Source: Prasinococcaceae sp. CCMP 1430
Taxonomy: Eukaryota > Plantae > Prasinodermophyta
Reading direction: 5' to 3'
DNA length: 64,000 nucleotides
Assembly (NCBI GenBank): GCA_013416795.1
Contig: RQSC01000525.1
Coordinates: forward strand, 7,679-71,678
Shown here: piece by piece, positions 31,641 through 37,300 of the stretch
How the letters are laid out: each line of letters opens with the position of its first letter
Position numbering within the stretch: position 1 is the stretch's first letter
Notes under the pieces: generated by a model
What the model was told of the DNA's origin: nothing
Databases searched by the model: none
Seen by the model: the letters and a program-made list of their open reading frames with translations, nothing else
Made by a program: the position numbers and the translations under genes

Positions 31641-33663
31641 TTAGATGCGCAGCGCCTCCTCGTACGCCTCGAGCGCCTCGGCGTAGCGGCCCTGGCGTTG
31701 GTACACGTTGCCAATGTTGTTGAGCGTCGCCGCCACGTCCGGGTGGTCGTCGCCCAGCGCGGCGCGCGTGATGCGCAGTGCCTTCTCGTGCGCCTGGAGC
31801 GCCTCGGCGTAGCGACCCTGGTTCATGTACACGATGCCAATGTTGTCGAGCGTCGTCGCCACGCCCGGGTGGTCTTCGCCCAGCGCGGCGCGCTGGATGC
31901 GCAGCGTCTCATCGTACGCCTCGAGAGCCTCGGCGGAGCGACCCTGGTCGTAGTACACGTTGCCAATGTTGTTGCGCATCGTCGCCACGTCCGGGTGGTC
32001 GTCGCCGAGCTTCGCGCGCTGGATGCGCAGCGCCTCCTCGTACGCCTCGAGTGCCTCGGCGTAGCGGCCCTGGTCGTAGTACACGCTGCCAATGTTGTTG
32101 TGCGTCGTCGCCACGTACGGGTGGTCGTCGCCCAGCGCGGCGCGGTTGATGCGCAGATCTTCCTCGTACGCCTTGAGCGCCTCGGCGTAGCGACCCTGGC
32201 TGAGGTACACGACGCCCATGTTGTTGAGCGTCTGCGCCACATCCGGATGGTCGTCGCCATGCTTCGCGCGTTGGATGCGCAGCGCCTCATCGTACGCCTC
32301 GAGCGCCTCGCCGTATCGACCCTGGTTCTGATACACGGCGCCAATGTTGTTGCGCGTCGTCGCCACGTCCGGGTGGTCGTCGCCCAGCTTGGCGCGTTGG
32401 ATGCGCAGCGCCTCCTGGTACGCCTCGAGCGCCTCGGCGTAGCGACCCTGGCTGTAGTGCACGACGCCCATGCTGTTGAGCGTCTTCGCCACATCCGGGT
32501 GGTCGTCGCCAAGCTTGGCGCGCCTGATGCGCAGCGCCTCCTCGTACGCCTTGAGCGCCTCGGGGTAGCGACCCTGACTTCGGTACACGCTGCCAATGTT
32601 GTTGCGCGTCGTCGCCACGTCCGGGTGGTCGTCGCCGAGCTTCGCGCGCTTGATGCGCAGCGCCTCCTCGAACGCCTCGAGCGCCTCGGGGTAGCTACCC
32701 TGGTTCTGATACACGGCGCCAATGTTGTTGCGCGTCGTCGCCACGTCCGGGTGCCATGTTGTTGCGCGTTGTCGCCAGGTCCGGGTGGTCGTCGCCAAGC
32801 GCGGCGCGCATGATTGGCAGCGCCTGCTCGTACACCTCCAGCGCCTCGCCGTAGCGACCCTGGCTCCGATACACTTCGCCAATGTTGTTGCGCGTCTTCG
32901 CCACATCCGGGTGGTCGTCGCCAAGCTTGGCGCGCCTGATGCGCAGCGCCTTCTCGTACGCCTCGAGCGCCTCGGCGTAGCGACCCTGGCTGGCGTACAC
33001 AATACCGATGTTGTTGCGCGCCGCCGCCACACTCGGATGATCGTCGCCCAGCGCGGCGCGCGTGATGCGCAGCGCCTCCTCGTACGCCTCGAGCGCTTTG
33101 GTGTGGCGACCCTGGCTATCGTAAACGGCGCCAATGTTGTTGCGCATCGCCGCGACATCCGGGTGGTCGTTGCCGAGGTTAGTGCGTTGGATGCGCAGCG
33201 CCTCCTCGTACGACTCGAGCGCCTCGGCGTAGCGACCCTGGAGTACGTACACGAGGCCCAAGTTGTTGCGCACCGCCGCCACACTCGGATGATCGTCGCT
33301 CAGCGCGGCGCGCGTGATGCGCAGCGCCTCCTCGTACGCATCGAGCGCCTCAGCGTAGCGACCCTGCTCCTTGTACACGGTGCCGATATTGTTGCGCATG
33401 GCCGCAATATGTCGGTGATCGTTGCCGAGCTTCGCGCGCTGGATGCGCAGCGCCTCCGCGTACGCCTCGAGCGCCTCGGAGTAGCGGCCCTGGCTCTCGT
33501 ACACGGTGCCAATGTTGTTGTGCGTCTGCGCCACATCCGGGTGGTCGTCGCCGAGCTTCGCGCGCTGGATGCGCAGCGCATCCTCGTACGCCTCGAGCGC
33601 CTCGTCGTAGCGACCCTGCTCCGCGGCTGTGCTCGCCATCTCGAGCTTTTTGATCTCGGCCAT
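31641..33663 (-). pseudogene. Stand-alone TPR array (about 16 units of 42 aa / 126 bp) interrupted by one frameshift near 32754; upstream part is a 7-unit ORF 33663-32695
   Basis: MAEIKKLEMASTAAEQ then repeats of GRYAEALEAYEEALRIxRAxLGDDHPDVAxxxNNIGxVYxxQ; frame changes at ...CGC AAC AAC ATG G|CAC CCG GAC; ends LRI* at 31641. Confidence 0.85.
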
Positions 33664-34058
33664 GGCCTCGCACCACACCGTCGGAGCCGCCCCCTCTTGT
33701 GCCCACCCGCTCGCTCGCTGCGAGCGCCGCAGGGAGCGCGCCGCCTTGGACAGTGGGACCCACCGACGGTCTCGCGTTGGGCGGGCGAGCGCTCCCACGC
33801 ACACCCCCTTCCCTCCCTCTTCCCCCCCGACCCTGCGCCGTGCGCGTGTGGCGCCCCCGCGCTGCTGCCCGCACGCAACGCACCGACACGCCACTGTCAG
33901 TCTGTCATTGTCGGGGCTGCGAACCTTCGATGCTACGTTCAATTTGATACGCGCTTCCCTCACATCACATCACATCGCAGCAAATCGATTGTACTGCAGT
34001 CCGAACGATGGGATTTGACCTCAGCGGCGCGAAGGAGCGGAACATTTTTTTTGCACGC

Positions 34059-34120
34059 GGCATTGGCATTGGATTCGCACGTCAAAACGAAAGCGCGTGA
34101 GAATCGGCATTGGAATTGGA
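34059..34120 (-). promoter_or_regulatory. Four CCAAT boxes as two GGCATTGG(C/A)ATTGGA copies upstream of the stand-alone TPR array
   Basis: ATTGG at 34062, 34068, 34109, 34115. Confidence 0.45.
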
Positions 34121-34322
34121 CTTTGGGAGCGCCTCCGATCAATGCGCTGTGACGCGGGTGTGTTTTAGGCTGTGCGCGCGCGTGCGTGAGAGATTTGAAA
34201 TTGAATCCAATGCGTTTTGACGCGGGTATTTGAGCGGCGCGGGAGTGGACTGGCTGGCGCCTGGCGCCGCGGCGGTGCTGGTGTCGAAATGCTTACCAGC
34301 TAAAATGTGTCTACTAGCTCGA

Positions 34323-37300
34323 CTACCGAGTGACTCCACACACATAAAAACAACGTAGTATCGGCACAACAAAGAGTCGTTTCCAAAGCGTTTTTGCATT
34401 TCGGATGTTGTTGCGCGTTGTAACTGTCTCCGGGTGGTCGTCCCCCAGCGCGGCGCGCTCGATGCGCAGGCACTCCTCGTACGCCTCGAGTGCCTCGGCG
34501 TAGCGACCCTGGTTCTCGTATACGGCGCCCATGTTGTTGAGGATCTGCGCCACATCCGGATGGTCGTCGCCCAGCGCGGCGCGGTATATGCGCAGCGCCT
34601 CCTCGTACGCATCGAGCGCCTCGGCGTAGCGACCCTGGCTGTAGTGCACCATCCCGATGTTGCTGCGCGTAATCGCCAAATCCGGGTGGTCTTCGCCCAG
34701 CGCAACGCGCTTGATGCGCAGCGCCTCCACGTACGCCTCAAGCGCTTGGGCGTAGCGACCCTGGCTGTAGTGCACGGCGCCGATGTTGTTGCGCGTCCCC
34801 GCCACATCCGGGTGGTCGTCGCCCAGCTTGGCGCGCCTGATGCGCTGCGCCTCCTCGAACGCTTCGAGCGCCTCGGCGTAGCGACCCTGGTTCTGGTACA
34901 CGGCACCCATGTTGTTGAGCGTCTTCGCCACGTCCGGGTGGTCGTCGCCCAGCGCGGCGCGCGTGATGCGCAGCGCCTCCTCGAAAGCCTCGAGCGCCTC
35001 GGCGTAGCGACCCTGGCTTGCGTACACGTTGCCCATGTTGTTGCGCGTTGTTGCCACATCCGAGTGGTCGTCGCCCAGCTTAGCACGCCTGATGCGCAGC
35101 GCCTCCTCGTACGCCTCAAGCGCCTTGGCGTAGCGACCCTGGTCCTTGTACACGTTGCCCATGTTGTTGCGCGTCCAAGCCACATGCGGGTGGTCGTCGC
35201 CCAGTGCGGCGCGCCTGATGCGCAGCACCTCCTCGTACGCCTCGAGCGCCTCGGCGTAGCGACCCTGGCTGTAGTGCACGTCGCCAATGCCGATTAGCGA
35301 CAGCGCAACGCTCGGGTGGTCGTCGCCCAGCGCGGCGCGCTTGATGCGCAGCGCCTCCTCGTACGCCTCGAGCGCCTCGGCGTAGCGGCCCTGGTGTCGG
35401 TACGCGATGCCCATGTTGTTTCGCGTCGCCGCCACATCCGGGTGGTCGTCGCCCAGCTTGGCGCGCTTGATGCGCAGCGCCTCCTCGAACGCCTCGAGCG
35501 CCTCGGCGTAGCGACCCTGGCGGCGGTACACGTTGCCCATGTTGTTGCGCGTTCCCGCGACATCCAGGTGGTCGTCGCCCAGCGCGGCGCGGTAGATGCG
35601 CAGATCCTCCTCGTACGCCTCGAGCGCCTGCCCATATTTGCCAAACACTGTGTCCAACACCATCGCAGCAGTGTGCAAGAGTCTGCCATGATCTACTGCG
35701 TCGGCCACGCCGCCCTCCCTCGCCCACGCGCGTAGCGCCTCTGCATGTGGCACCAACGCCCGCGCACGTGCCCACGTCGACACGTCCTCCTCTTTGTACA
35801 ATTTCATCTCGGCAGACACAGCGGCCAGCGCGCCCTGAGCCGAGCGCCCCTCGCGCGCGGCGGCCTGCAATAGACGGTGCATCGAGTAGGTTGCCTCCAT
35901 CTGTCCCGATGCGCCCAGCGGAATTCGAGGGCCGAGCTGTAGCAGGTTCAGGTCGCACAGCAGGCCGATGTCCTCGTCGCTGCAGCCGCCCCCGCCGGCG
36001 CGCAAAAGTAGGCTCTCAGGGATGCCCCTCGGATCAACAAACGCCGCAACGTCCAGCATCTTGGCTGATTGCTTGTATTCCGTCGACTCTCGAACGAAGC
36101 GCAGAGGCGCCGCGAGCGCCGCGGACACCTTCTCATCCGCCTGCTCGATCCCCTCGGCGACGTTTTGCAGCGAGAGTCCCTTCCTCTGGATGACGCGTCT
36201 GTCACTCACAAACTTTCGTGTCACGCTGAGCGCGAGCGCGTGGCCCTTAAGCTCTTCGTGGATATGTAATGCTGCTGCCCGGTCATCCTCGCTCGCATCG
36301 TCATCACCAAGCAGCAGGGCGACGCCGGCTGGCCTACTCAGCGGGCCCACGGCCACGTGGTTGATGTGGCCGATGTCGTCCACCTGGCCCTTCAGCGTGT
36401 CGCTGCGCGACGTGAGCAAAATGCGCACGTTGGTTGCGCCTCTCAACGACGAGAAAAATCGAGGACGCAACCACGCGGCACCACCTACATCCGGCACGTT
36501 GTCGAAGACGATGAGGCTTACACTTTTGCGCTTGATGACGGCCTCCAGCAGCCTGTCCGCAAGCTGCTGCGCCGTGAGCTTACGTTTGCCGATTCTGCTT
36601 GGCGACAGATCGCTGAGCGCCGCGAGCGCCTCAGTGTAGCTGTTTACGAGCTTTGTCTCCTCAGTTTTGTGTTTCTCATCCGTCGCGGCGTCTAGCACCA
36701 ACACAACGCGATCATCGCGGGGCTTGTTGTCGGCGGTGAAGGCAAAGCGGTACGCATATCGGTACGCCAGCTGCGACTTGCCCGCGCCAGCGATGCCCGT
36801 GAGCGATGCTATTGTGCCAGGCGAGGCAAGCATCTCGAGCAGCTTTTGTATTTCCACTTCGCGTCCGATGAGCGCCGGTAAACCGGCCGGTAGACCAAAG
36901 TGGAAGAACGTGGTGTTGCTCACAACCAAGCCATCCAATTGTACTAGGGCTCTGTCCATGCCAAGGTGTACTTCGACGAGCAAACGTGCATTGATCTCAT
37001 CCTTGAAGGTGTCCATGTCCTCCTTGGTGCTGTTTAGTTCCTCTGAGTACCGCGTAGCGCGCACAATTCGGCGCACCGTGCCGCAGTAACCCAAGCACTC
37101 GAGCCCACAGCACCAGTCGTCTGCGGCAATCTTATCCACCAGCTCCACGCCGCCGTCCACGCGCCTGGCGAAGGCGAGCAGCAGGTCCTTGTTTTCCTTG
37201 CGCGCCAATCTGTCTAGCTGCATCCGCGTGGCGTCTTCGCCTCCATGGTCCAGGCGCTCCTTCACCTGGCGCAGCGTCGCAGCCGCTGTCTTAACTGCCT

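What the first reader, a model, noticed from the sequence alone, without database searches (positions are those of the whole stretch)
31641..35642. NLR plus adjacent TPR cassette array: a candidate repeat-shuffling diversification system
Seen: the NLR ends in 10 tandem 126-bp TPR units. About 650 bp downstream, on the same strand, lies a second array of about 16 units with the same nucleotide scaffold but no NB-ARC domain. Known: fungal STAND/HNWD and brown algal NB-ARC-TPR receptors diversify by repeat shuffling. Inference: the stand-alone array is a donor reservoir (gene conversion or unequal crossover into the sensor domain), or a decoy/partner sensor. This would be an adaptive-like immune locus in a green alga, possibly anti-viral.
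Basis: partly seen in the sequence, partly recalled or inferred. Interest (0 to 1): 0.88.

Follow-up and report, generated by a model that had tools for sequence, protein, structure and literature searches.

The report
Algal NLR with linked TPR-only genes
In the green alga Prasinoderma coloniale an NLR-like receptor gene is followed by a second, separately transcribed TPR-repeat gene built from the same fast-reshuffling 126-bp units. That second gene is a broken fusion of two TPR-only genes, not a proven donor store for the receptor.

Summary
A spliced STAND/NB-ARC-like gene (37968-34323) ends in 10 TPR units of exactly 126 bp. After a 659-bp spacer comes a second array of 16 units (33663-31641).

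The second array is not a silent cassette store and not an exon of the NLR. It has its own ATG and N-terminal cap, and RNA contigs match it while the spacer has no RNA cover.

Three related Tara metagenome loci are 78-95% identical. In two of them (L001, L002) the same position holds two capped TPR-only genes. In the window these two are fused by an out-of-register 34-bp scar, which cuts the frame to 322 aa. The C-terminal caps of both window arrays are missing.

Reshuffling is real. Flanks and the NOD region are about 94% identical between lineages (dS 0.15-0.18), but collinear units are no closer than random pairs (83%, pS 0.25). Unit numbers differ (10/7/6), and six codons are hypervariable with pN > pS.

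Units do not cluster by array. However, no significant conversion tract links the NLR array to the stand-alone array. The only hint is one haplotype (VHYS) private to this lineage.

This is a new algal variant of the high-internal-conservation NB-ARC-TPR NLRs known from fungi. Other first-stage notes of this scan had already flagged this same stretch.

The parts
37666..37968 (-). NLR exon 1 (ATG 37968-37966; 101 codons)
   Evidence: An RNA contig joins 37667/37666 to 37371/37370. The EukProt model PRCOL_00002404-RA (P0001) has the same junction ...GPVAM|GLLRF....
37371..37665 (-). 295-bp GT..AG intron
   Evidence: The sequence reads G|GTGCGT ... CCAG|G. The spliced contig is X20 record 24. An unspliced piece, X19 record 16, is also present.
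35646..37370 (-). NLR exon 2, non-repeat part: all-helical N-terminal region, then the NB-ARC-like NOD (GIAGAGKS, LIVFDNV, RILLTSR, GHALAL, SMHRLL)
   Evidence: Pfam gives ATPase_2 5.8e-6, DUF7779 6.8e-5 and NB-ARC 1.6e-3, all below cut-off. NCBIfam FxSxx_TPR gives 2.6e-18 over residues 165-550. The motifs are read from the translation. Exact RNA contigs cover 35491-37371.
34406..35645 (-). NLR sensor array A: 10 TPR units of 126 bp; the last is cut after codon 36 (NNI|)
   Evidence: Pfam TPR_10 2e-133 with 10 stretches.
34323..34405 (-). Lineage-specific 27-codon tail and TAG stop, in place of the C-cap unit and conserved tail seen in relatives
   Evidence: Read. The stretch 34405-34282 has no counterpart in L001 or L002. 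L001 and L002 end with a degenerate cap unit plus ...EQQSDAGAPST.GSNP*. RNA contigs run unspliced to 34362 and 34283.
33664..34322 (.). Spacer between the two genes
   Evidence: RNA-type runs X19 and X20 show zero depth across 33750-34149 and no listed RNA piece between 33566 and 34282, while both sides are covered. No joint spans it. 34073-33600 is 88% identical to the stretch upstream of L001 gene B, and 34281-34077 is 81% identical to the L002 spacer.
33619..33663 (-). Start codon and N-terminal cap of the stand-alone gene (MAEIKKLEMASTAAE)
   Evidence: Read. The cap is conserved in both TPR-only genes of L001 and in the third array of L002.
32754..33618 (-). Stand-alone array, part B: 7 units in frame with the ATG
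   Evidence: Pfam TPR_10 4.6e-89 with 7 stretches. Exact RNA contigs lie at 33424-33565, 33322-33453, 32963-33070 and 32780-32916.
32720..32787 (-). Out-of-register junction: two 34-bp copies with 3 differences, break at 32754|32753. It adds 34 bp and shifts the frame, which then stops at 32697-32695.
   Evidence: TRF period 34, sequence, 160-bp anchor spacing. DNA contig X5 record 27 (32724-32916) carries the junction independently.
31641..32753 (-). Stand-alone array, part C: a 51-bp partial unit, 8 full units and 17 codons, then TAA (31643-31641). It is in a different frame from part B.
   Evidence: Pfam TPR_10 1.3e-132. The array abuts the 3' flank that in L001 lies about 130 bp beyond gene C's stop, so the cap unit and tail are absent. 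32753-32343 is 92% identical to L002 5401-5811. Exact RNA contigs lie at 32598-32726 and 32210-32348.

Best explanation
The locus is a small cluster of paralogues. One gene is an NLR-like STAND receptor: helical N-terminal domain, NB-ARC-like NOD, and a 42-residue TPR_10/12 sensor array. Immediately downstream on the same strand sit TPR-only genes that arose by tandem duplication of the sensor array. Each has its own promoter region, ATG, N-cap and C-cap.

All arrays draw on one pool of 126-bp units. The scaffold of these units is kept alike at the nucleotide level, while about six helix-A/B codons are hypervariable. Arrays are remade by unequal or ectopic recombination and by unit gain and loss, faster than point substitution separates the lineages.

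In the sequenced Prasinoderma coloniale strain this instability has left three scars:
- The two TPR-only genes are fused through an out-of-register junction, which shifts the frame and leaves a 322-aa product.
- The 3' cap and tail of the distal gene are deleted.
- The NLR's own C-cap is replaced by an unrelated 27-residue tail.

The stand-alone array is therefore a transcribed, probably decaying sensor-only paralogue. It takes part passively in the common repeat pool. It is not a dedicated silent donor.

What is shown: the anatomy, the splicing, transcription of both genes but not the spacer, conservation of the three-array layout, erased unit orthology, hypervariable codons, and the scars. 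What is inferred: recombination as the mechanism, an immune role, and the protein-level role of the TPR-only products (competitor, decoy or co-sensor).
For: Gene structure and transcription:
- An RNA joint 37667->37371 matches the EukProt model.
- RNA contigs cover the NOD, the tail up to 34283 and many exact pieces of array 2. They give zero cover over 33750-34149, and no joint crosses the spacer.

Separate genes in relatives:
- L001 has flanks 94.4% identical over 12 kb and 95.9% over 3.3 kb. It carries an NLR with 7 units, cap, tail and stop, then ORFs of 481 and 466 aa. Each ORF starts MAEIKKLEMASTAEE. and ends in a degenerate cap unit.
- L002 has the same three-array layout.

The window's array 2 spans both genes:
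- Its 5' spacer and ATG match L001 gene B at 88%.
- Its 3' flank matches the flank of L001 gene C.
- An inner tract matches L002's third array at 92%.
- Unit B07 carries the LPIM type found otherwise only in L001 gene C.
- The scar is confirmed in independent DNA.

One shared unit pool:
- There is no clustering of NLR units against stand-alone units (identity difference 0.002, p=0.35).
- Two units use different synonymous codons at a conserved residue with probability 0.137, against 0.513 expected from codon usage.
- Codons 18, 31, 32, 38, 41 and 42 are hypervariable, with pN about 0.5 and pS about 0.3. The scaffold has pN 0.10 and pS 0.20.

Reshuffling:
- Collinear W/X units have identity 0.83 and pS 0.25, the same as off-register pairs. 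The adjoining NOD has pS 0.157.
- No tract of 110 bp or more at 90% identity or more exists between the window's arrays and L001's arrays.
- Unit counts are 10/7/6 for the NLR array.
- A mosaic tract B06-C02 is significant at global p=0.03.

Genome-wide family: read depth over the TPR bins is 2-30 times that of the unique flanks.
Against: - The RNA evidence is from assembled contigs only. It gives no strand, no transcript ends and no reliable expression levels. A low-abundance spliced form linking the arrays could be missed.
- One RNA contig (X20 record 17) shows a normal unit junction where the scar is. This may be a de Bruijn path artefact, or a transcript from a paralogue or allele.
- A 160-nt GT..AG interval (32835-32676) would restore the frame.
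- Part C still shows the same scaffold constraint as intact arrays (pN 0.095, pS 0.142). So either the frameshift is recent or part C is still used.
- The relatives are short-read metagenome scaffolds, so their unit counts could contain assembly errors.
- ORF intactness is weak evidence, because the unit has no stop codon in any forward frame.
- No experiment links the gene to immunity.
Confidence: 0.6

Rival explanations
1. Dedicated donor reservoir. The stand-alone array exists mainly to supply units to the NLR sensor by gene conversion or unequal crossover, in the germline or even somatically. This would resemble lamprey VLR cassettes or the 'excised exon reservoir' proposed for Ectocarpus.
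For: - Same strand, 659 bp away, same scaffold, and units not separable by array.
- The 3-codon haplotype VHYS (GTGCACTACAGC) occurs only in A03, A07, A08 and C02 of the window, and in none of 42 units of L001 and L002.
- The nearest neighbours of A02, A03, A06 and A07 are C units.
- Arrays are reshuffled between lineages.
- The frameshifted part C keeps an intact scaffold. The same is reported for WD40 repeats of fungal NWD pseudogenes (PMC13449251).
Against: - The array has its own ATG, N-cap and conserved upstream region. In relatives it forms complete capped ORFs, and it is transcribed.
- Maximum inter-array unit identity is 90.5%, with no identical units.
- The longest A-versus-B/C shared tract (28 polymorphic sites) is within the permutation range, whose 95% point is 35.
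- The NLR array shares as many private k-mers with arrays of other genomes as with its own neighbour.
- The direction of the VHYS transfer is unknown, and three of the four copies are in the NLR array.
- There are no data on somatic change.
Confidence: 0.12
2. One gene. The 659-bp spacer is an intron (or an alternative 3' exon choice), so the NLR carries up to 26 TPR units, or alternative sensor blocks.
For: - Same strand, and no RNA cover over the spacer, which is what an intron would show.
- Several in-frame GT..AG combinations exist between 34424-34334 and 33717-33615.
- The NLR array lacks a C-cap in this strain.
Against: - RNA contigs continue unspliced through the last unit into the tail and past the stop, to 34362 and 34283. 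No joint across the spacer is listed, although both borders are unique sequence.
- Candidate donors are poor (GTTACA, GTTGTG), compared with GTGCGT at the real intron.
- In L001 and L002 the NLR ORF ends with a cap unit, a conserved tail and a stop, and the next array starts with ATG and an N-cap.
Confidence: 0.1
3. Functional partner or decoy. The TPR-only product (322 aa here, about 470-480 aa in relatives) binds the same ligands or the NLR itself, and so tunes activation as a sensor-only co-receptor, inhibitor or bait.
For: - The NLR plus TPR-only genes layout is conserved in three lineages.
- The gene is transcribed.
- It has the same hypervariable positions, with pN > pS there and scaffold pN < pS, as in the NLR array.
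- N- and C-caps fit a soluble solenoid protein.
Against: - In the reference strain the gene is frameshifted and has lost its cap, so it is dispensable at least in culture.
- L002's middle gene has drifted to about 75% identity, with indels.
- There are no interaction or expression-response data.
Confidence: 0.15

Closest known systems
Fungal NB-ARC-TPR and NACHT-WD40/ANK NLRs with high internal conservation (HIC) repeats (Podospora HNWD/nwd, sesB-like/NB-ARC/TPR; Dyrka 2014 PMC4986451; Ament-Velasquez 2026 PMC13449251)
   Same: - STAND NTPase followed by 42-residue TPR_10-type repeats.
- Units are alike at the nucleotide level, with a few hypervariable codons where pN > pS.
- Repeat number differs between lineages.
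- Units are exchangeable between paralogues.
- Repeats of broken copies stay intact.
- A helical N-terminal domain is a possible cell-death effector.
   Different: - The host is a unicellular marine green alga (Prasinodermophyta), not a filamentous fungus.
- Conservation is more moderate: mean pairwise aa identity 0.66-0.74 and no identical units.
- The partners here are tightly linked sensor-only genes without any NTPase, conserved across lineages. In fungi the exchanging partners are unlinked full NLR paralogues.
- There is no RIP.
Ectocarpus NB-ARC-TPR and ROCO-LRR loci evolving by exon shuffling (Zambounis 2012, PMC3341825)
   Same: - Algal NB-ARC-TPR receptors with 42-residue TPR modules.
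- Clustered genes and pseudogenes.
- Birth-and-death dynamics.
- The idea that non-coding or excised repeat copies act as a reservoir.
   Different: In Ectocarpus each TPR is a separate exon and shuffling is proposed to work through introns. Here the arrays are intron-free head-to-tail repeats (the only intron found lies upstream of the NOD), so exchange must be by unequal or ectopic recombination within coding DNA.
Bacterial (cyanobacterial/actinobacterial) NB-ARC-TPR STAND proteins, e.g. the FxSxx-COOH system TPR protein (NCBIfam NF040586)
   Same: This is the best sequence match of the NOD part (E 2.6e-18). The closest database matches of the TPR part are cyanobacterial TPR_10/12 and NB-ARC-TPR proteins at 39-48% identity.
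   Different: The score (65.9 bits) is far below the equivalog cut-off (300 bits). The window's gene is a eukaryotic spliced gene with a different N-terminal domain, no FxSxx context, and adjacent TPR-only paralogues.
Cassette-based receptor assembly (lamprey VLR, trypanosome VSG, Neisseria pilS)
   Same: A receptor or surface gene flanked by arrays of related partial units that could donate sequence.
   Different: Those donors are silent and incomplete, and are copied into an expression site by a dedicated mechanism. Here the neighbour is a complete, transcribed gene in relatives, and no directional transfer is shown.

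Membership tests
STAND NTPase of the NB-ARC (AP-ATPase) type | Walker A P-loop GxxxxGK[ST] | tested here: met
   GIAGAGKS is present in the translation. It lies in the region matched by ATPase_2, AAA_25, NB-ARC and NACHT.
STAND NTPase of the NB-ARC (AP-ATPase) type | Ordered downstream motifs: Walker B hhhhD[D/N], RNBS-B/sensor-1 (hhTTR-like), GLPL-like, MHD-like | tested here: met
   SLIVFDNV, RILLTSR, KGHALAL (Pro replaced by Ala) and YSMHRLL occur in that order in the translation. 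They were read by eye, not scored.
STAND NTPase of the NB-ARC (AP-ATPase) type | Significant match to a curated NB-ARC profile | tested here: inconclusive
   Pfam NB-ARC gives 18.2 bits (cut-off 23.5) and E 1.6e-3. ATPase_2 gives 26.7 bits (cut-off 33.2). NCBIfam FxSxx_TPR (a bacterial NB-ARC-TPR protein) gives E 2.6e-18 over 386 residues, below its equivalog cut-off. There is no PDB sequence hit.
TPR_10/TPR_12 (42-residue, kinesin-light-chain-type) repeat arrays | Profile match above the curated cut-off in tandem 42-residue register | tested here: met
   TPR_10 E values are 2e-133 (10 stretches), 4.6e-89 (7 stretches) and 1.3e-132 (9 stretches). TPR_12 reaches 1.8e-168. The 126-bp spacing is exact.
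High-internal-conservation (HIC) repeat NLRs | Repeat similarity coefficient Psim >= 0.7 (PMC13449251), or >= 85% aa identity over 100 aa (PMC4986451) | tested here: inconclusive
   By my own calculation of identity to the consensus, aa Psim is 0.80-0.83, which passes the first rule. Mean pairwise aa identity is 0.66-0.74 (maximum 0.88), which fails the 85% rule.
High-internal-conservation (HIC) repeat NLRs | Nucleotide-level homogeneity beyond protein constraint | tested here: met
   Synonymous codons are position-specific. The probability that two units differ in codon at a conserved residue is 0.137, against 0.513 expected from the codon usage of the same gene.
High-internal-conservation (HIC) repeat NLRs | Hypervariable codons at fixed positions under diversifying selection | tested here: met
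   Codons 18, 31, 32, 38, 41 and 42 have entropy 1.6-3.1 bits, pN 0.46-0.60 and pS 0.26-0.44. The scaffold has pN about 0.10 and pS about 0.20. These are counting statistics, not a codon-model test.
High-internal-conservation (HIC) repeat NLRs | Repeat-number polymorphism and shuffling between alleles or lineages | tested here: met
   NLR arrays have 10, 7 and 6 units in the window, L001 and L002. Collinear units are no closer than random pairs, although the NOD has pS 0.157. Caveat: the relatives are metagenome scaffolds of related lineages, not strains of known relationship.
Donor-cassette diversification systems (VLR/VSG/pilS type) | Donor copies are silent and incomplete (no start, not expressed as such) | tested here: not met
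   The array has an ATG and N-cap, a conserved upstream region, and complete capped ORFs in L001. Exact RNA contigs lie on array 2.
Donor-cassette diversification systems (VLR/VSG/pilS type) | Demonstrable tracts copied from donor into the expressed receptor | tested here: inconclusive
   No significant A-versus-B/C tract was found. There are no identical units. One private shared 12-nt haplotype exists. The units are short and close to saturated at the variable sites, so power is low.
Donor-cassette diversification systems (VLR/VSG/pilS type) | Somatic or clonal change of the receptor | not testable with these tools
   Only assembled contigs of public runs were available. This needs long reads from clonal lines.

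The most novel reading that the evidence does not exclude
The NLR and its linked TPR-only genes form a conserved exchange module. The sensor-only genes would be kept next to the receptor because short-range ectopic recombination with them re-deals the receptor's ligand-binding units at a high rate, possibly also during clonal growth. This would give a unicellular, early-branching green alga a heritable receptor-diversifying locus. The scars in the reference strain would be by-products of that activity.
Probability: 0.1. Interest if true: 0.85.

Novelty: new variant of a known kind. Interest (0 to 1): 0.5.

Why it matters
NLR-like receptors with internally conserved, hypervariable repeat sensors are well documented in fungi and have been proposed in brown algae. 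Here the same evolutionary pattern appears in Prasinodermophyta, the deepest branch of green plants.

There is a new twist: sensor-only TPR genes stay linked to the receptor across lineages and share its unit pool. Flanks about 95% identical surround arrays whose unit orthology is erased, which gives a concrete locus for measuring repeat turnover rates.

The locus also allows two direct tests: whether proximity drives exchange, and what sensor-only paralogues do. This bears on how early plant-lineage immunity generated recognition diversity.

It also corrects the public gene model, which stops before the TPR sensor.

Tried and rejected
1. Intron joining the arrays. In-frame GT..AG pairs exist, but RNA contigs read through and no joint is seen. 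Rejected as the main form.
2. Splicing out the scar. One 160-nt GT..AG candidate (32835-32676) exists, but RNA contigs cross both sites unspliced. Not supported.
3. Assembly artefact for the scar. Rejected, because an independent DNA contig carries it.
4. Three-unit higher-order repeat (TRF period 378). Lag analysis shows no lag-3 excess.
5. Collinear segmental duplication of array A into array 2. There is no diagonal in the unit identity matrix.
6. Homologue search with the TPR-only protein. It was swamped by generic TPR proteins and did not return even the query's own entry.
7. Search with the non-TPR tail of L001's third gene: nothing found.
8. JGI metagenome scan for NOD relatives: nothing found.
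9. Fold of the N-terminal 300 residues. pLDDT is 46, too poor for a fold search. Atlas feature hits to SesA (0.84) and MLKL_N/NB-ARC (0.77) are below the trust level, so 'MLKL/HeLo-like' stays a lead.
10. PDB sequence search of the NOD: blank.
11. Pfam search on the tails: blank.
12. Strain variation from public runs. The unique parts are identical in the two organism labels laid, and the repeats are fragmented in contigs, so nothing could be learned there.

Full report
**Organism and gene**

The NOD part of the ORF is 100% identical to EukProt protein PRCOL_00002404-RA (P0001), so the window comes from Prasinoderma coloniale. The window is 64-73% G+C.

The feature is on the minus strand. ORF 37469-34323 carries a P-loop NTPase region followed by TPRs. 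RNA-type contigs join 37371 to a sequence that lies at 37667-37696. The sequence there reads G|GTGCGT...CCAG|G. The gene is therefore:
- exon 1, 37968-37666
- a 295-bp intron
- exon 2, 37370-34323

That gives 1116 codons. The public model has the same splice junction but stops at residue 636, before the repeats.

Evidence that the non-repeat part is an NB-ARC-type STAND NTPase:
- Pfam gives only sub-threshold NTPase hits: ATPase_2 5.8e-6, DUF7779, NB-ARC 1.6e-3.
- NCBIfam's bacterial NB-ARC-TPR model FxSxx_TPR matches residues 165-550 at 2.6e-18.
- The motifs GIAGAGKS, LIVFDNV, RILLTSR, GHALAL and SMHRLL occur in the canonical order.
- A PDB sequence search is blank.

The N-terminal 300 residues are predicted all-helical, but at pLDDT 46. 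Atlas feature hits to SesA and MLKL_N are below the trust level.

**The observation**

TRF reports a 126-bp period across 31644-35629. Anchors are spaced exactly 126 bp:
- ten units in the NLR array (A01-A10, 35645-34406); the first, degenerate unit was placed by hand and confirmed by nhmmer
- seven units (B01-B07, 33618-32754)
- nine units (C01-C09, 32702-31644)

One spacing is irregular, at 160 bp. nhmmer finds these units nowhere else in the window. All parts are TPR_10/TPR_12, with E values from 1e-89 to 1e-168. The NLR stop (34325-34323) and the next ATG (33663) are 659 bp apart.

1. Array 2 begins with ATG and a cap peptide, MAEIKKLEMASTAAEQGRY.
2. Between B07 and C01 lies a 34-bp out-of-register junction: copies at 32787-32754 and 32753-32720, with 3 differences. 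It shifts the frame, so the ORF from 33663 stops at 32697-32695 after 322 codons. The remaining units lie in another frame up to TAA at 31643-31641. An independent DNA contig (X5, 32724-32916) carries the junction.
3. A10 breaks after codon 36 and runs into an unrelated 27-codon tail. C09 breaks after codon 17 directly into a TAA.

**Transcription**

Two runs behave as RNA: they hold the spliced joint. Their contigs lie exactly on:
- the NOD (35491-37371)
- the end of array A and its tail (34362-34512; 34283-34505)
- six array-2 pieces between 32210 and 33565

The bins 33750-34149 have zero depth, and no joint crosses the spacer. Because these are contigs, strand, transcript ends and expression levels cannot be read. 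One contig shows a normal unit junction in place of the scar. The sequence context (59 nt shared with C01) makes a graph-path artefact likely, so this is left open.

**Relatives**

Three Tara Oceans scaffolds encode NOD regions that are 88, 87 and 69% identical at the protein level.

*L001.* It is syntenic over 12.2 kb (94.4%) upstream and 3.3 kb (95.9%) downstream. Between those flanks it holds:
- an NLR with 7 units, the last a degenerate cap unit, followed by a hydrophilic tail and a stop
- an ORF of 481 aa with 11 units
- an ORF of 466 aa with 9 units and a 75-residue non-TPR tail

Both TPR-only ORFs start MAEIKKLEMASTAEE. and end in cap units.

*L002.* It has the same three arrays. Its NLR ends in the same cap and tail as in L001.

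The stand-alone arrays are therefore complete TPR-only genes in relatives. The layout of an NLR followed by two sensor-only genes predates the split of these lineages (NOD dS 0.15-0.18).

The window's array 2 spans both genes:
- Its upstream spacer and ATG match L001 gene B at 88%.
- Its 3' flank matches that of L001 gene C. The array abuts this flank with the cap and tail missing.
- The tract 32753-32343 matches L002's third array at 92%.
- B07 carries a unit type (LPIM) otherwise seen only in L001 gene C.

The simplest reading is a B-C fusion by deletion. The 34-bp scar is either the fusion point itself or a later deletion. The NLR's cap and tail, and part of the spacer, were replaced by 124 bp that are unique to this lineage.

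**Unit evolution**

Mean nucleotide identity between units is 0.80-0.85 within arrays and 0.80-0.82 between arrays. The maximum is 0.905, and there are no identical units.

Label permutation shows no separation of NLR units from stand-alone units (difference 0.002, p=0.35). There is only a slight A/B/C effect (0.009, p=0.014), which comes from part C being more uniform.

Six codons are hypervariable (18, 31, 32, 38, 41, 42 in the QGRY register). At these codons pN is about 0.5 and pS about 0.3. Elsewhere pN is about 0.10 and pS about 0.20. In the standard TPR helix-A/helix-B layout these codons fall on helix A and on the end of helix B. This placement is inferred, not modelled.

Scaffold codons are position-specific. 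Two units differ in their synonymous codon at a conserved residue with probability 0.137, against 0.513 expected from codon usage. The likeness is therefore at the DNA level.

My calculation of aa Psim gives 0.80-0.83. This passes the 0.7 HIC rule of PMC13449251. Mean pairwise aa identity is 0.66-0.74, which is below the 85% rule of PMC4986451.

**Turnover**

Collinear units of the window and L001 NLR arrays have identity 0.83 and pS 0.25. Off-register pairs give the same values (0.78-0.82; 0.24-0.31). The NOD next door has pS 0.157. The same holds for L001 against L002, and for window part B against L001 gene B.

No tract of 110 bp or more at 90% identity or more links the window's arrays to L001's arrays. 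Only C01-C02 keep orthology with L002 (identity 0.94, pS 0.04).

Unit orthology has thus been erased within a divergence of dS about 0.17, and unit numbers differ. This supports reshuffling.

**Donor question**

A GENECONV-like permutation test finds one significant mosaic tract, B06-C02, which lies inside array 2 (38 polymorphic sites, global p=0.03). None is significant between array A and array 2: the best is 28 sites, against a 95% point of 35.

Private k-mers shared by array A with its own neighbours (13-26) are no more numerous than those shared with arrays of other genomes (up to 27) or with orthologous A arrays (16-30).

The one positive hint is the 12-nt haplotype GTGCACTACAGC. It occurs only in A03, A07, A08 and C02, and is absent from the 42 units of L001 and L002. 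The direction of transfer is unknown.

Exchange within a common pool is therefore plausible. A dedicated donor role is not shown.

**Comparison with known systems**

The pattern matches fungal HIC NLRs: NB-ARC-TPR with TPR_10 units, repeat-number polymorphism, positive selection, and inter-gene repeat exchange (PMC4986451, PMC13449251).

It recalls the Ectocarpus NB-ARC-TPR loci (PMC3341825). Those differ in having one TPR per exon.

What is new is the host lineage and the conserved tight linkage of sensor-only genes.

Other first-stage notes of this scan report further NLR-TPR loci in the same genome. I did not check them. Read depth over the TPR bins, 2-30 times that of the unique flanks, is consistent with a genome-wide unit family.

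**Verdict**

- The repeat-shuffling dynamics are real.
- The 'cassette reservoir' is in fact a transcribed, and here broken, fusion of TPR-only paralogue genes.
- Adaptive-like or antiviral function is untested.

Noticed in passing
window 34323-37968 versus EukProt PRCOL_00002404-RA (P0001): The public gene model ends at residue 636 (...EEDVSTWAP). It omits the whole TPR sensor, although the ORF continues for about 480 more codons.
   Followed up: partly
L001:16392-16622: The third gene of L001 has a 75-residue non-TPR C-terminal tail (...KRAVEFLSIRELRVELNALG...) that looks SAP-like by eye. Pfam finds nothing. The window lacks this tail entirely.
   Followed up: partly
L001:13359-13650 and L001:15222-15520: The two TPR-only genes of L001 share the N-cap and first two units almost residue for residue (first unit about 90% nt). 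They also have the highest private k-mer sharing of any array pair (61-84). This suggests a recent duplication or conversion between them in that lineage.
   Followed up: partly
L002:3734-4504: The middle TPR-only gene of L002 has drifted: about 75% identity to other units, unit lengths changed by indels, and a different N-cap (MNTVAVADRRIKEGQAYMDQERY). It appears to have left the homogenised pool.
   Followed up: no
window 37371-37665: An RNA contig also covers the intron (depth 5.3, against 21 for the exon) while the intergenic spacer has none. This fits some intron retention or pre-mRNA rather than DNA carry-over.
   Followed up: no
window 26043-27248: Long (AC)n/(CA)n microsatellites lie at 26043-26152, 26438-26522 and 27036-27248, downstream of the locus.
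   Followed up: no
window 32835 and 32676: Unit B07 has GTG (Val) where other units have GCG (Ala). This creates a GT that, paired with an AG 160 nt downstream, would exactly remove the frameshift. No spliced read supports it.
   Followed up: partly
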